Part shown: positions 38,903-44,164 of the stretch, in pieces
Layout of the letters: every line of letters begins with the position of its first letter
How positions within the stretch are numbered: the first letter of the stretch is position 1
Source of the DNA: Selaginella moellendorffii
Lineage: Eukaryota; Plantae; Lycopodiophyta
Length of the DNA: 64,000 nucleotides
Assembly: GCF_000143415.4 (NCBI RefSeq)
Contig: NW_003314441.1
Coordinates: 71,482 to 135,481, forward strand
Reading direction: 5' to 3'
Made by a program: the position numbers and the translations under genes
Notes under the pieces: generated by a model
Told to the model about the DNA's origin: nothing
The model's input: only the letters and a program-made list of their open reading frames with translations
Database searches by the model: none

Positions 38903-39428
38903 AGGTGTAAGGAAAAGAAAAAATAAAACTCTTTTTTATATATCGAGCTACTTAACACACGCTTTTTTCTTTGTAGTTGGACTTTTCCTTGAGAAATTGG
39001 TAGACGAAGCTTTGTTCTCGGCGAGAAAATCTGATCAAAGGGAATATGGTGTTTTAGGGAATCGAGCTCCCGACGTATTTACCACCCGGGAAAAAAGACG
39101 GGTTTTCATATGAGTGGTGGTCCCTTGCGCTTGTCCGGAAAAATGTTGCAACTCGCCAAGTCCCCTCCAATTGGTAAAAGAGTTCTTTAAAGACATACGA
39201 AATTGGGCCATATGGCGCTCGTCTCATCGACTGGGTGGAAGAGTACGGTAGGGGACTGTGGATGAAGATAGATGGGAAGGGGTGGAGGGGAATGTGGCGC
39301 TTTCTAGATACTCAAGCCGATTCGCTCGATTGCTAGCAGAGGGTGGGATTCCGTGGGCGCTATGGAGTAAGCTGGCCATCTCCAAGGATCTGGTGTGTAG
39401 CGCCGTGTTCCAGGCGAGGTTCTGTGCT

Positions 39429-39540
39429 AGGGGTGAGATTTGAGTGTTGATTCGCGATGTCCAGGAGTTCTGTGGTGTAGGTCTGCCAGGGGTGAGATTT
39501 GAGTGTTGATTCGCGATGTCCAGGAGTTGTGTGGTGTAGG
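39429..39540 (+). repeat. 59-bp tandem duplication just upstream of the F-box ATG
   Basis: AGGGGTGAGATTTGAGTGTTGATTCGCGATGTCCAGGAGTT(C/G)TGTGGTGTAGG at 39429 and 39488. Confidence 0.9.
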
Positions 39541-39583
39541 AAGCCGAGATTTGGAGGCATAGGGGTTTTTTGACCGGGGAGAG

Positions 39584-42027
39584 ATGGTTGAATCCACCAG
39601 GAGGCGGGTGCCTGACGATTCCAGGGGCCTGCTGTGCTGCATCGACGACGTCCTGGAGAAGATCTTTGGCTACATCAAGAAGCCCGTGGAGAGAAATGCT
39701 ATCTCGGCTGTGTGCAAGCGGTTTCACGAGCTGGAAGCTCGGACGAGGCATCATGTCCTGGTCTACAACATGTACGCTGTCAACCCCATGAAGCTGTTCG
39801 AGCGATTTCCCAGCGTGAGATCGATTACCATCAAAGGGAATCCTCGGCTCGTGGATTTCGACATACTCCCCAGGGATTGGGCCGGCCACGCAGGACCTTG
39901 GATTGCAGCTATCAAAGCTCATCCCCAGCTTAACCGCTTCCGGATCAAGAGGATGACGATCACCGACTCTCAGATCGAGGAGCTCTGTGCTGCCTGTGGT
40001 CCCAACCTCAAGATCATGCAGTTTGACAAGTGCTCCGGCTTTAGCACCCAGGGTCTCCAAGCACTCGCCAAGTTTTGCAAGTAAGTTGTCGCTTTTGGTT
40101 TCCTACTCTTCCTCTCTTCCTTTGTGTTTCTTAGAGCTCATTCCAAGTTCTGATTTTTTTTCTTTCTTTTTCTAGGAATCTTACCCACTTGGGACTTGCA
40201 CAGTCGATGATTGATAGCACTAGTGATACCAAATGGCTCAAGGACCTGGTAAACTCGTGTCCCGCTCTCGAATACCTGGACTTGTCACTTATAGAGATGG
40301 GCGACGTGGATGAAGCGGTGCTGGTGAAGTTGGCCGAGCGTTGCAAGCTGCTTAAGCTGTGGGAGTCCGAGACTCAAAACTCCGAGCGGTTTTTGCCTGT
40401 GCTGCAAAAGTGCTCTTCCAACTTAAGTGACCTTGGGATCGAGCGGATCAACAGCAACTCCGAGACGTCGTTACTGGCGAAGTGTACTGCACTGGAGGGG
40501 CTGTCCGGCATCTTCGATCTAGTGGACGATGGAATGCACGCTTTTATGTCGGTCAGTTCTCGTTTGACGAGGCTCGACCTTTCTTACTCCAACCTTACCG
40601 AGGTGGAGATAGCGGAGGTGCTTCGAGCCTGTCCTAACCTGCAGTATCTTCGGGTAAGTGTTTCAACTTTCCAGGTCCAGGTCTCATTGATCACCTCCAT
40701 GTTCCTTTCATGTTTCCAGGTGTTAGACTTGGCTGGAGACCACGGGTTGCAAGCGCTGGGGAACTCTTGCAAAGACTTACACAGGCTTGTCGTTGAGAGT
40801 CCTTCTGCAATTGACGGTGGGGTGGTGACACACGCCGGCCTTATGGCTGTTGCACAAGGCTGTAGAAACCTGCAGAAGCTCATTTTCTATCCATCTTTCA
40901 TCACCAACGAAGCGTTTTATGCGCTCGCTTACAACTGCCCGAACTTGATGGACGTGCGAATATGTCTCATCCAGTCAAGTAGCACTGGCGAGAACGTAAG
41001 TTACTAGTGTGTTTGGAAGCTCTTACATTGATATTTCTCGCAGATGCCATGGGAGTGCCTGGACGAAGGGGTGACCGCACTCGTCCGGGAATGCAGATCG
41101 CTCTACCGATTGACGCTCTGCTTCGACGTCCAGGCGGATGTTGAGTTCCTCACCGACGCGGGCGTGGCTGCAATTGGCGAATATGGAAAGAAGATCAGGG
41201 TGCTGACCCTTGTCCACTGTGGCAGCAGCGACATGGGATTGGTACCAGTTCTTCGCGGCTGCAACAAACTTCAGAGGCTTGAAATCCGGAAGTGCCGTTT
41301 CGGTGATGAAAGTGAGTGGTAACTATGTGGGGACGCGAAACTAACACTGGTTTCTTACGCAGGCATGCAAGAAATCGCTTTGAACAGCGAGCTGCATCTC
41401 AAGCACTTGTTCGTCCAAGGGTGTGAAGTGACGATAGATGGGCTCAGCAGCCTGGCTTACCGGGCCAAGCACACAAACTCGAGGTTCTACGTGGAAGTGA
41501 TTGGCTGTAAAGACGGGCGGTGCCTGGAGGAGCACAGGTACTCGTGCACGGACGAGTCTTGCGAGAACCACCACGCCTTCTCGCTCAGCTGCTCCCACTG
41601 GCAGATCCTGGCATACCATTCACTCACAGAGCCCCGCGACGACACTCCATGGTTTATCCACCGCTTCGACTCGATTCTCTCCGAGGCTTCTTCGCTGCCT
41701 TTCACAAGAGCTGAACCAGGAGGCGCTCTTCAGCTCATGCCAGAGAGCAGTAGCGGTGGGATTGATCTTGATCTGAGCACCGGCGGGATCGATCTAAACG
41801 AAGACTCGTCGGAGCCGCTCCAGCTGATGCCGGAGAGCAGTGGCAGTGGCGGCGGTGGTGGCAGTGGTGGGATTGATTTGAACGAGCCAGCGGAGGAGAG
41901 TTGCTCGTCATTCCCAGGATTTGAGAGGAAGGAAGTCTTCCACTTTCCCGACATTCTGGAGCGCGTAGCGGCAGAGCCAACGTTGCACTTGGGAGCTCCA
42001 TTGGTGCTCCAGGCCTCCTTACTGTGA
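39584..42027 (+). CDS. TIR1/AFB/COI1-family F-box LRR protein, divergent, ~727 aa; exons 39584-40080, 40176-40653, 40720-40995, 41044-41311, 41363-42027
   Basis: F-box IDDVLEKIFGY...RNAISAVCKRF, followed by RFPSVRSITIKGNPRLVDFDILPRDWAG, CSGFSTQGL, CPNLQYLRVLD, VTHAGLMAVAQGC, GCNKLQRLEIRKCRFGD and ILAYHSLTEPRDDTP. All four introns are GT-AG and preserve frame. Confidence 0.92.
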
Positions 42028-42111
42028 TTTTCTCTCGCGAGACCATGTATTTCTATTTGTGTTTGAAAGAAAGGAAGTTCCTAGCTTATCAAGAGCCCTA
42101 GCTAGTTCGCT

Positions 42112-44164
42112 ATGGAGCTCTATTATGCGTCCTGCGCGGCGGGGATCGAGAGAGTGCTCGTCTCGGAGGTAATCTTTTTCCTCTTTCATCGATCCATTCA
42201 TCCCAAATCGCGACCACTCCAGGTTGAAAGGCTACCAGGGACGAGAATCGAAGAGGCTACAGTGAGCTTTTATGGAGGCATTCTTTTCCAAACTGAATCG
42301 TCGCCAGAGGTCGAAGAGAATTCTTTCTCGTGATTGGCTGACATTGTTGAGTGAATGGTAGGATGTTTTCAAGCTTAGAGCGGCAGACAATGTGTACGCT
42401 TATCTCGGACACTTCAAGGTGTGTGTGTGATTTCGTAAGTTTCAATAGAGAAAAAGAAGAGGTATAATTGACATGAACTTGTTTGAAAGGATGTTCCTGT
42501 GGACAAGGATGGCGCTCTTTCTTACTTGAAAAGCTTGGCTTCCAAGGTAATGTAACTCAAATCACTCAGAGCTCACTGCGTTTTGCAGATTTCATGGGAG
42601 CCGGCTTTGCTGCTCTTTCGAAAGTGGCAGGCGATGCAAGACAGGGTGCTACAATCACCGCTTACGTTTCGAGTAACCTGTGAACGGAAGTGCCTCAAGA
42701 TGAAGAAACACCCATTCTCGTCGGTGGATGTTGCAGGTATGTTCGTTTTCATCAAAATGACAAGAAACGCAGTGCGGCTTTCACTTAATCGCAGCTGCGC
42801 TGGGAGAAAGTGTTTATAATCTCCATAACTGGCCGGCGGACATGAGGTGCTATAACGGTTTGTGTGGATGCCTGGTTTTGCCTCGTCTTCAAGTACATTG
42901 TTTGCAGTGGAAGTGTTTGCATGGCTGAGAGATTCCGAGCTTCTTGTAGCGATTGGACTTCTCTACGGGTAAGAGATAAACGTTTTTGTTGTTTTATTCT
43001 ACCTGGTTCGTCTTCTTCTTTCGCTCTATAGTAAACCAACCGAGCAAGTTGTCGATGGCAGGAAAGCTCCTAGGCCCAGTCGTTCAGATTCTCAGGTCAG
43101 CAATCACGTTTTTTCCTAGCATCTAGTGTCCAATTCTGATTTGGTGATCTCGTTTAGCTCTACTCAAAAAGGCTCTACAGAAAGGCGCTGGTTCCAACGT
43201 CCTTGAGGCCTAGGTGTGTGTGGCGAGCTTTTGCCGAGATTTATACTGCTTGAGCCGCAATTGTGACAGTTTTTACCGCAGTGTGGCGTATGCTCTTGTG
43301 CAACTTGGACACATCAAATGCGGAGACGTCGTTCTGGACCCCATGTACGTGAATTATATATTGTGATTGTTTTCTATTCTACGGTGGTGTGCTCCCTAGG
43401 TGTGGATGTGGAACCATACCTCTAGAAGCGGCGGACTGCTTTCGTGGACAACTTTTGTGCTTGGGTGGGGACATTTCTCCGTGCGCTGTGGCTGCAGCTG
43501 GAGAAAATGCTCGAGGTATTCTTGAGCTCAACTGGTTTGTTGCTTTTCTTCTTATTACAGGAAGTGACGCATGCGATATACTTCAGTGGAATGCTACCTT
43601 CATGCCTGTGCGATCCGGATGTGTGGACTGGGTCATCTGTGACATGCCCTTTGGTGTTCGCTGTGGTAAGAGGTCTCACACTTCACGCATGGCTGTGTTT
43701 GATTCTGTGTTTTGTATTAGGAAGTACACAGGCTCGCGATTGGCTTTGTCCAAAAGTTACTCTGGAGGTAATTTACTTTGTATTTTCTTTCTCCTTGTTT
43801 GATGTGTGGAAAAACTTTGTTTTGCTTTAGATTGCACGCGTATTAAGACAAGAGACTGGTGAGTCGGCATAATTTATTTACGCCTTTCAGATCGGGAGTT
43901 CCCTGTGCCGCAGGTGTTGCTGTTCTTATGTCGCAAGGCAAAGCAATGAAGCAGGAAATGGAGAACACAACATACTTGAAGCTTTTGCAGCAATACGAGG
44001 CTGACATGGAGGTGAGCTTCTACTTGTAGCAACGAATTTATCACATGTTGTGAATGCAGGGAATTCTGGTGGAAATATACATAGCACAACGAACATCACA
44101 ACCGATCCAATCTCTAGTAAGACTGCATTTTGTTTTAGAGAATTATCTATATCTTGTAGTTTGA
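42112..44164 (+). CDS. THUMP-domain / UPF0020 RNA guanine-N2 methyltransferase (THUMPD2/3-Trm14-like), multi-exon
   Basis: Exons give MELYYASCAAGIERVL, TFRVTCER...FSSVDVA, TSLRPSVAYAL, VVLDPMCGCGTIPLEAA (SAM-binding) and VDWVICDMPFG. The 3' end is approximate. Confidence 0.82.

What the first reader, a model, noticed from the sequence alone, without database searches (positions are those of the whole stretch)
41668..42027. TIR1/COI1-family receptor homolog with a C-terminal tail of repeated EAR-like motifs
Seen: after the usual end of the family fold (...ILAYHSLTEPRDDTPWFIHRF) the ORF continues ~119 aa. The tail is built from an internal duplication (LQLMPESS twice) and carries GGIDLDLS, GGIDLNE and GGIDLNEP, ending PTLHLG...LVLQASLL. 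Known: DLNxxP and LxLxL are EAR motifs that recruit TOPLESS. In auxin and jasmonate signalling they sit on the substrates or adaptors (Aux/IAA, NINJA, some JAZ), not on the F-box receptor. Inference: this could be a rewired module in which the F-box binds the co-repressor itself, acting as a repressor, a decoy or a TPL-targeting ligase. The motifs are near-matches (DLNEP rather than strict DLNxxP).
Basis: partly seen in the sequence, partly recalled or inferred. Interest (0 to 1): 0.85.

Follow-up and report, generated by a model that had tools for sequence, protein, structure and literature searches.

The report
Orphan F-box receptor with EAR-like tail
The spikemoss gene XFB, an orphan cousin of the auxin and jasmonate receptors, really does carry a transcribed 119-residue disordered tail whose repeated short motifs look preserved by selection and resemble co-repressor docking (EAR) motifs, but binding to the co-repressor is untested.

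Summary
The gene is Selaginella moellendorffii XFB (SmXFB1). My five-exon, 727-aa model is identical to UniProt D8TEP2 / SELMODRAFT_449292.

XFB is a published orphan sister clade of TIR1/AFB and COI1. It occurs in mosses and some lycophytes, and its function is unknown.

Transcript contigs from four studies confirm all four introns. They show exon 5 running unspliced across the tail.

The tail (aa 609-727) is acidic and predicted disordered. It holds 2 x LQLMPESS and 3 x GGIDL(D/N).

All 8 nucleotide differences between the LQLMPESS pair and the GGIDLNE pair are synonymous, while the linker between them has diverged. This points to selection on the peptides.

DLNEP matches the accepted EAR variant DLNxP. 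IDLDL is close to LDLDL.

Evidence against:
- The two moss XFB tails I could read lack these motifs.
- No other lycophyte ortholog could be retrieved.
- The one DLNxP effector tested in a published co-IP is not listed among the TOPLESS binders.
- The allele on the other scaffold stops 5 residues early, so LVLQASLL is dispensable.

TOPLESS binding therefore remains a motif-level inference, at about 0.4.

The scan flagged the same feature earlier on another piece of this genome (s1-346921), probably the allelic scaffold.

The parts
39584..40080 (+). Exon 1 of SmXFB1 (ATG at 39584). It holds the F-box (aa 20-57) and the Transp_inhibit domain (aa 76-118).
   Evidence: Pfam finds F-box_5 at E=3e-13 and Transp_inhibit at E=3e-13. 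The intron 40081-40175 is confirmed by contigs of 4 runs.
40176..40653 (+). Exon 2, leucine-rich repeats.
   Evidence: Model. The GT..AG joint 40652/40719 (cut +1) is seen in 4 runs.
40720..40995 (+). Exon 3, leucine-rich repeats. It includes R405, the counterpart of TIR1 R403.
   Evidence: for the model, for the joint 40995/41044, and for the alignment to TIR1.
41044..41311 (+). Exon 4, leucine-rich repeats.
   Evidence: for the model and for the joint 41311/41363.
41363..42027 (+). Exon 5: the last repeats, the C-terminal cap and the 119-aa tail, with the stop at 42025-42027.
   Evidence: Contigs run unspliced from 41363 to 42047 (X2), 42009 (X6), 41966 (X8) and 42166 (X1). There is no joint inside. 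The translation is 100% identical to P0010 residues 508-727.
41668..42024 (+). C-terminal tail, aa 609-727. It is acidic (net charge -16), rich in S/L/G/E/P, and predicted disordered.
   Evidence: for composition. In the AF2 model residues 615-722 are below pLDDT 50 apart from residue 663. There is no Pfam hit. Exhaustive phmmer found no homolog outside its own cluster.
41728..41751 (+). LQLMPESS, copy 1.
41818..41841 (+). LQLMPESS, copy 2. It differs from copy 1 at 3 nucleotides, all synonymous.
41755..41775 (+). GGIDLDL (aa 638-644). IDLDL is an LxLxL-like motif with Ile at the first position.
   Evidence: LDLDL is listed as an EAR motif of wheat Q.
41782..41802 (+). GGIDLNE (aa 647-653), a DLN core followed by DSSEP. 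The allele has S instead of G647.
41866..41889 (+). GGIDLNEP (aa 675-682). DLNEP is an exact DLNxP pattern. It differs from copy 2 at 5 nucleotides over the GGIDLNE codons, all synonymous.
   Evidence: The DLNxP pattern is accepted.
42010..42012 (+). Codon Q723. In the other allele (XP_002976462.2, 722 aa) C42010T makes it a stop, removing QASLL.

Best explanation
The gene is SmXFB1, the Selaginella moellendorffii member of the orphan XFB clade of F-box/LRR receptor-like proteins. This clade is the published sister of the TIR1/AFB auxin receptors and the COI1 jasmonate receptors.

Its last exon encodes, in one piece, a 119-residue acidic and intrinsically disordered C-terminal tail. The tail arose partly by an old internal duplication. 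It carries short linear motifs kept by selection: two LQLMPESS and three GGIDL(D/N).

The most likely role of the IDL(D/N) motifs is EAR-type docking to the TOPLESS/TPR co-repressor. One motif is an exact DLNxP, one a DLN core, and one an LDLDL-like IDLDL. Three copies on a flexible tail would bind the TPL tetramer multivalently. That would hold the SCF-XFB ligase on co-repressor complexes next to whatever TPL-bound repressor it degrades, or would let the F-box protein itself act as a repressor.

Shown: the gene model, the continuous transcript, the family, the predicted disorder, the repeats, the synonymous-only divergence and the pattern match.

Inferred: translation of the tail, SCF assembly, TPL binding and its consequence.
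For: Gene model and identity:
- Transcript contigs of four studies confirm the introns and an unspliced exon 5.
- The model is identical to the annotated 727-aa XFB protein.

Family:
- Pfam finds F-box_5 and Transp_inhibit.
- TIR1 matches at E=2e-92 and COI1 at 5e-79.
- The XFB clade is named and described as of unknown function. The published alignment labels this sequence SmXFB1.

Selection on the motifs:
- LQLMPESS copy 1 versus copy 2 has 3 differences, all synonymous.
- GGIDLNE copy 2 versus copy 3 has 5 differences, all synonymous.
- Together S=9.2 and N=35.8 sites, with pS of 0.67-1.07. Allelic pS is 0.023-0.029.
- The duplication is therefore old and the peptide cores were held constant, while the linker diverged with indels.

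Other support:
- In the AF2 model residues 615-722 are below pLDDT 50 apart from residue 663.
- DLNx(x)P and DLNxP are accepted EAR patterns.
- Listed EAR motifs include DLNEPP (SlERF.F12), DLNELP (Jsi1) and LDLDL (wheat Q).
- Mutating the Jsi1 DLNxxP motif abolished TPL binding.
- EAR motifs are mostly C-terminal (table).
Against: - The match is to 5-residue patterns, and only one of the three copies fits a published pattern exactly. There is no strict LxLxL in the tail.
- In the one co-IP experiment I found on a DLNxP-type motif (M. oryzae MGG_08414), that protein is not listed among the TPL binders.
- The two moss XFB proteins available have shorter tails (28 and 66 residues beyond the cap) with no DLN. 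The motifs are therefore not a clade-wide feature.
- No other lycophyte ortholog could be retrieved, so cross-species conservation is untested.
- The repeat test carries ascertainment bias, because the cores were picked for being identical in protein.
- No ribosome or peptide evidence shows that the tail is translated.
Confidence: 0.4

Rival explanations
1. The motifs are selected docking sites for a partner other than TOPLESS. Candidates are SUMO, an unknown adaptor or kinase, or the protein's own LRR pocket as an autoinhibitory pseudo-substrate. The SUMO idea rests on GIDLNEDSSE resembling a SUMO-interaction motif of the psi-psi-D-L-T type followed by acidic and serine residues.
For: The synonymous-only divergence shows selection on the peptides but not on any particular partner. 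LQLMPESS is conserved as strongly as GGIDLNE, yet it matches no EAR pattern. The tail is acidic and Ser-rich, as are the flanks of SUMO-interaction motifs (my own knowledge of the SIM consensus, not tested here).
Against: G-I-D-L-N has only two hydrophobic positions, whereas the SIM core usually has three or four. DLNEP fits a published EAR pattern exactly. The AF2 model gives no confident contact of the tail with the LRR domain.
Confidence: 0.3
2. The tail is a lineage-specific, low-complexity extension with no specific function. The EAR resemblance is then a chance match multiplied by an internal duplication.
For: - No homolog of the tail was found in 1.84 billion representative proteins.
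- The two moss relatives available have unrelated, shorter tails.
- A (GGN)n microsatellite-like stretch lies inside the tail.
- A natural allele truncates the last five residues and changes G647 next to motif 2.
- The allelic pN/pS of the tail (0.32, from four changes) is higher than that of the fold (0.15).
- The region is poor in stop codons in one antisense frame too.
Against: There are 8 synonymous and 0 non-synonymous differences over 15 motif codons, at near-saturated synonymous divergence. That is hard to obtain without selection on the peptide. Gene conversion would have erased the synonymous differences as well.
Confidence: 0.2
3. The tail is not part of the protein. It would then be removed by a minor splice form, or the annotated frame would not be translated to 42027.
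For: Contigs cannot show rare isoforms, and no translation data were available (caveats).
Against: Contigs from four studies cross 41363 to at least 41966 without a joint, and one reaches 42047. RefSeq and UniProt models include the tail. The in-frame synonymous-only pattern implies translation in this frame.
Confidence: 0.05

Closest known systems
XFB clade of F-box/LRR proteins (SmXFB1, PpXFB1/2 and moss relatives; Prigge et al. 2010, 2020)
   Same: This is the clade member itself. It is identical to UniProt D8TEP2 'XFB' and is labelled SmXFB1 in the published alignment. Its best relatives are moss XFBs at 39-41% identity.
   Different: Nothing differs at the gene level. The feature not described in the papers I could read is the tail with EAR-like repeats. 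The two moss members available have shorter tails without these motifs.
TIR1/AFB auxin receptors (PDB 2P1M)
   Same: F-box, Transp_inhibit domain and LRR solenoid, aligned over residues 17-546 at E=2e-92. The counterparts of TIR1 R403, R436 and F82 are kept (R405, R439, F92; read).
   Different: It is a separate clade. The pocket and InsP6 positions are changed: H78R, F79L, R401D, S438T, S462T, R484Q, R509H (read). There is a Cys/His-rich insertion before the cap and a 119-aa tail. By my own knowledge of its sequence, TIR1 ends about 18 residues after the cap.
COI1 jasmonate receptor (PDB 3OGK)
   Same: The same architecture, E=5e-79. It shares Arg at the TIR1-H78 position and Asp at the TIR1-R401 position (read).
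   Different: It is a separate clade, with a lower score than TIR1. COI1 has no comparable tail.
EAR motifs (LxLxL, DLNx(x)P) of Aux/IAA, NINJA, class II ERFs, SMXL/D53
   Same: DLNEP fits DLNxP. IDLDL resembles LDLDL. The motifs sit in a C-terminal, disordered context and occur in several copies.
   Different: Here the motifs sit on the F-box receptor-like subunit, not on a transcription factor, a degradation substrate or an adaptor. In the papers I searched I found no F-box protein described with EAR motifs. Function is untested.

Membership tests
TIR1/AFB/COI1/XFB superfamily of F-box-LRR proteins | N-terminal F-box of the TIR1 type | tested here: met
   PF18511 F-box_5, E=3.2e-13, aa 20-57, above the curated cut-off.
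TIR1/AFB/COI1/XFB superfamily of F-box-LRR proteins | Transp_inhibit domain followed by an LRR solenoid alignable with TIR1 and COI1 over nearly the full length | tested here: met
   PF18791, E=3e-13. TIR1 residues 7-535 align at E=2.3e-92 and COI1 residues 5-533 at E=5e-79. The AF2 model shows alternating strand/helix repeats.
XFB clade | Placement in the XFB clade of the published TIR1/AFB/XFB/COI1 phylogeny | tested here: met
   The sequence is the row 'Selaginella_moellendorffii_104859_SmXFB1' of the published alignment. It is grouped there with PpXFB1/2 and other moss sequences. The UniProt gene name is XFB.
XFB clade | Closer to moss XFB proteins than to TIR1/AFB or COI1 | tested here: met
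   Identity is 39-41% to P0005 and P0006, where P0006 is Ceratodon R40isotig09604 of the XFB rows. Identity is 34-35% to the non-XFB relative P0007. Bit scores are 430/408 against 295.
TIR1/AFB auxin receptors | Auxin and InsP6 pocket residues (TIR1 H78, F79, F82, R401, R403, R436, S438, S462, R484, R509) | tested here: not met
   Read from the alignment. F82, R403 and R436 are kept. The changes are H78R, F79L, R401D, S438T, S462T, R484Q and R509H. The list of residues is my recollection of Tan et al. 2007.
EAR repression motif | Sequence pattern LxLxL or DLNx(x)P | tested here: met
   DLNEP at aa 678-682 fits DLNxP (pattern). The other two copies (IDLDL, IDLNEDSSEP) fit no strict pattern. The only strict LxLxL (LDLSL, aa 200) lies inside the LRR fold and is shared with the moss relatives.
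EAR repression motif | Motif-dependent binding to TOPLESS/TPR | not testable with these tools
   No interaction data exist. One published DLNxP effector is not listed among the TPL binders, while DLNxxP ones bind.
EAR repression motif | Transferable transcriptional repression | not testable with these tools
   This needs a GAL4-DBD fusion reporter assay.
EAR repression motif | Conservation of the motif among orthologs | tested here: inconclusive
   The motif is absent from the two moss XFB tails available. No lycophyte ortholog was retrievable. Paralogous copies within the tail are conserved with synonymous-only changes.

The most novel reading that the evidence does not exclude
SmXFB1 is a receptor-type F-box protein that docks directly and multivalently on the TOPLESS co-repressor through its own EAR motifs. 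In that reading the adaptor function carried by Aux/IAA, JAZ/NINJA or SMXL in the known hormone pathways has moved onto the ligase subunit. This would give the orphan XFB clade its first mechanistic handle.
Probability: 0.3. Interest if true: 0.75.

Novelty: new variant of a known kind. Interest (0 to 1): 0.5.

Why it matters
XFB is the third land-plant branch of the TIR1/COI1 receptor family, and it has no known ligand, substrate or function.

TIR1 and COI1 both act by destroying repressors that recruit TOPLESS through EAR motifs. If EAR-type motifs on the XFB protein itself are functional, two things follow. XFB would be linked to the same co-repressor hub. It would also be a different wiring of a hormone-type module, with the receptor tethered to the co-repressor.

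This gives a cheap and direct experiment on an orphan receptor. If the motifs do not bind TPL, the tail still marks selected short linear motifs that can be used as bait to find XFB partners.

Tried and rejected
Searches for relatives of the tail:
- Exhaustive phmmer of the last exon against 1.84 billion representatives found only the gene's own cluster. The three weak hits (P0002-P0004) are repeat-rich proteins with no relation to this family. Two of them carry GGIDxD repeats, a chance similarity.
- Word-indexed searches with the whole protein, with an XFB profile and with the last exon alone found only two moss XFBs and one non-XFB relative. They found no lycophyte ortholog or fragment. This database evidently holds few plant proteins, so the blank says little.
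- The ESM Atlas search of the tail gave nothing usable, with all TM scores below 0.35.
- BLAST of the tail against the rest of the window found no other copy, so there is no sign of a transposon origin.

Attempts to read the S. acanthonota XFB tail:
- The supplementary alignment of the eLife 2020 paper is stored with truncated lines, and the tail motifs are not in any held file.
- The Mutte 2018 supplements hold no matching sequence.
- Prigge et al. 2010 is not held.

Other points:
- I rejected gene conversion as the cause of the repeat identity, because the synonymous sites differ.
- I rejected a purely compositional open frame as sufficient, because of the codon-position pattern of the differences.
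Full report
**1. Observation**

After ...ILAYHSLTEPRDDTPWFIHRF the frame stays open for 119 more codons (41668-42024) and ends at a TGA.

The motifs are present at these positions:
- LQLMPESS at 41728-41751 and 41818-41841.
- GGIDLDL at 41755-41775.
- GGIDLNE at 41782-41802.
- GGIDLNEP at 41866-41889.

At the DNA level the duplication shows as a 32-nt repeat at 90-nt spacing with 84% identity. A three-copy 15-nt family covers the GGID codons. A short (GGN)n-like tandem array lies between them.

**2. Gene model and transcription**

I built a five-exon model with canonical GT..AG introns of 95, 66, 48 and 51 nt. The exons are 39584-40080, 40176-40653, 40720-40995, 41044-41311 and 41363-42027. 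The product is 727 aa.

Twenty sequencing runs from seven studies hold the stretch. Seventeen of them hold half or more of its sampled words, up to 0.77, which is about the exonic fraction.

I laid the contigs of four runs from four studies on 39000-43000.
- All four introns are skipped exactly as modelled.
- Exon 5 is continuous from 41363 to 42047 (X2), 42009 (X6), 41966 (X8) and 42166 (X1).
- There is no joint inside the tail.
- Two contigs end one base before heterozygous positions (41967 and 42010). I read these as assembly breaks caused by both alleles being present in the RNA.

These are contigs, so rare isoforms cannot be excluded. The run type (RNA) is a guess by the tool. Spliced contigs in four studies are nevertheless only expected from RNA.

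**3. Identity**

Exhaustive phmmer of the last exon found one real hit, P0001. It is 722 aa and 98% identical.

Cluster look-up shows the following:
- P0001 is XP_002976462.2 of Selaginella moellendorffii.
- A 727-aa member, P0010, is EFJ04886.1 / XP_024523373.1 / UniProt D8TEP2. UniProt gives it the gene name XFB (SELMODRAFT_449292).

My model is identical to P0010 over its full length. The window's exon 5 is 100% identical to P0010 residues 508-727. The protein, tail included, is therefore already in public annotation.

**4. Family**

Exon 1 carries Pfam F-box_5 and Transp_inhibit, both above threshold. The protein aligns with TIR1 (2P1M) at E=2.3e-92 and with COI1 (3OGK) at E=5e-79, over about 530 residues in each case.

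Prigge et al. 2020 describe three land-plant families that are sister to algal F-box/LRR proteins. [quoted passage not shown]

Their supplementary alignment has a row named Selaginella_moellendorffii_104859_SmXFB1. Its visible part matches this gene, apart from one residue (D183) missing from that row. Next to it are S. acanthonota ZYCD2003560, PpXFB1/2, and Ceratodon, Pohlia, Sphagnum and Takakia sequences.

My closest retrievable relatives are two moss proteins at 39-41% identity. One of them, P0006, is identical in the visible part to the Ceratodon R40isotig09604 row. RefSeq's automatic name 'AUXIN SIGNALING F-BOX 2' is therefore misleading.

Reading the TIR1 alignment gives these correspondences:
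- The Arg that anchors the hormone carboxylate in TIR1 (R403) is kept, as R405.
- R436 and F82 are also kept.
- H78, F79, R401, S438, S462, R484 and R509 are replaced.

The residue list is from my recollection of Tan et al. 2007. This fits an orphan receptor with a different ligand or cofactor.

**5. The tail as protein**

The tail has 119 residues and a net charge of -16. Its commonest residues are S 18, L 17, G 16, E 13 and P 10.

- An AF2 model built on a 4-sequence alignment gives the LRR domain moderate to high confidence. Residues 615-722 are below pLDDT 50 apart from residue 663, with only a short low-confidence helix at 701-710. The alignment is shallow, so this is weak but consistent evidence for disorder.
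- There is no Pfam match.
- The Atlas gave no match.
- There is no other copy in the window.

The first residues after the cap (DSILSE) align with a PLYSE motif in the moss proteins, with S613 and E614 invariant. Everything after that is unalignable. The moss tails are 28 and 66 residues long beyond the cap and contain no DLN.

**6. Evidence for selection**

I compared the repeat copies codon by codon.

| Pair | Nucleotide differences | Synonymous | pS |
|---|---|---|---|
| LQLMPESS 1 vs 2 | 3 | 3 | 0.67 |
| GGIDLNE 2 vs 3 | 5 | 5 | about 1 |

Together this is 8 synonymous and 0 non-synonymous differences, over 9.2 synonymous and 35.8 non-synonymous sites.

By contrast, the segment between the cores has diverged with indels (SGGIDLDLST versus GSGGGGGS).

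The allelic synonymous divergence of the same gene is only 0.023-0.029. The duplication is therefore much older than the haplotype split. The peptide cores were held constant while silent sites ran towards saturation.

Gene conversion cannot explain this, because it would also homogenise silent sites.

The cores were chosen because they are identical in protein, so the simple binomial figure (3e-6) overstates the significance. Even so, 15 unchanged codons at that silent divergence are not expected without constraint. The same pattern is also the best available evidence that this frame is translated.

**7. Allelic variation**

The other allele (scaffold GL377595.1, locus L001) differs from the window at 22 coding positions. 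Four of them lie in the tail:
- G647S, the first Gly of the second GGIDLNE copy.
- Two synonymous changes.
- C42010T, which makes Q723 a stop.

pN/pS is 0.15 for residues 1-608 and 0.32 for the tail. The tail figure rests on only four changes.

**8. Are the motifs EAR motifs?**

A systematic review defines the EAR consensus as LxLxL or DLNx(x)P, and tabulates DLNxP motifs separately. A rice survey likewise recognises DLNxP. DLNEP at aa 678-682 is thus an exact match rather than a near-match.

The review's table lists EAR motifs with Glu after DLN: DLNEPP in tomato SlERF.F12 and DLNELP in the Ustilago effector Jsi1. It also lists LDLDL in wheat Q.

For Jsi1, mutating the DLNxxP motif abolished binding to TPL. 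That binding maps to the second WD40 domain.

On the other side:
- The same study tested one DLNxP-type effector (MGG_08414) and does not list it among the proteins that co-precipitated with TPL.
- The second copy here (DLNEDSSEP) fits no strict pattern.
- IDLDL has Ile where the pattern demands Leu.
- The only strict LxLxL in the protein (LDLSL, aa 200) is a structural LRR strand shared with the moss relatives. This shows how easily such patterns arise.
- LQLMPESS is conserved as strongly as GGIDLNE and has no EAR reading.

**9. Mechanism**

My preferred reading, at about 0.4, is as follows. The tail is a flexible, multivalent docking arm for TPL/TPR. It would keep the SCF-XFB ligase on co-repressor complexes, next to a TPL-bound repressor that it targets. 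Alternatively it would make the F-box protein itself repressive.

The reasoning by analogy is that both characterised sister families degrade TPL-recruiting repressors. This is established knowledge of the Aux/IAA and JAZ/NINJA pathways, not something tested here.

The rivals are:
- Selected motifs for another partner, including a SUMO-interaction-like reading of IDLNEDSSE, or autoinhibition (0.3).
- A neutral lineage-specific extension (0.2).
- A tail that is not translated (0.05).

**10. Novelty**

The gene, its 727-aa product and its clade are known. I found no paper in the searchable library that mentions EAR-like motifs in XFB, or an F-box receptor carrying EAR motifs. That library lacks most subscription journals, including Prigge et al. 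2010.

The scan itself flagged the same feature earlier on another piece of this genome (s1-346921), most likely the allelic scaffold.

I rate it a new variant of a known kind, of moderate interest. It is a concrete and cheap hypothesis for an orphan receptor clade.

Noticed in passing
window 41506-41601 (aa 555-586): There is a Cys/His-rich insertion (GCKDGRCLEEHRYSCTDESCENHHAFSLSCSH) just before the C-terminal cap. It is absent from the two moss XFBs and from the TIR1-like relative, and the AF2 model has low confidence there. Three of the six amino-acid replacements between the alleles cluster in it: N575D, H576Q and A578R. It might be a metal-binding loop or simply a fast-evolving insertion.
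   Followed up: partly
window 39800-41400 (pocket positions of the LRR domain): Compared with TIR1, the carboxylate-anchoring Arg (R403, here R405), R436 and F82 are kept. H78, F79, R401, S438, S462, R484 and R509 are replaced. Two of the replacements match COI1. All of this is read. It suggests a ligand-binding orphan receptor with a different ligand or cofactor.
   Followed up: partly
window 42112-43000 (+): The next gene starts only 85 nt after the XFB stop. It is a many-exon gene with introns of 42-71 nt, and its product carries Pfam UPF0020 (PF01170). One transcript contig (X1) runs from XFB exon 5 into its exons. Either the XFB 3' UTR overlaps the neighbour's 5' end, or the assembler merged two transcripts.
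   Followed up: no
window 39425-39540: There is a tandem duplication of a 57-nt unit (96% identical, 59-nt spacing) just upstream of the start codon. All four transcript contigs begin at 39499, inside the second copy. The other haplotype carries 21 extra bases at 39425.
   Followed up: partly
window 40848, 41967, 42010: Transcript contigs of different runs break exactly at heterozygous SNP positions, and different runs carry different alleles (tables 3 and 8). This suggests that both alleles, the 727-aa and the 722-aa form, are expressed.
   Followed up: partly
L001:1-2314 (upstream neighbour on the allelic scaffold): The gene upstream of XFB encodes a Kelch / beta-propeller protein, with FBX42-like Pfam hits.
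   Followed up: no
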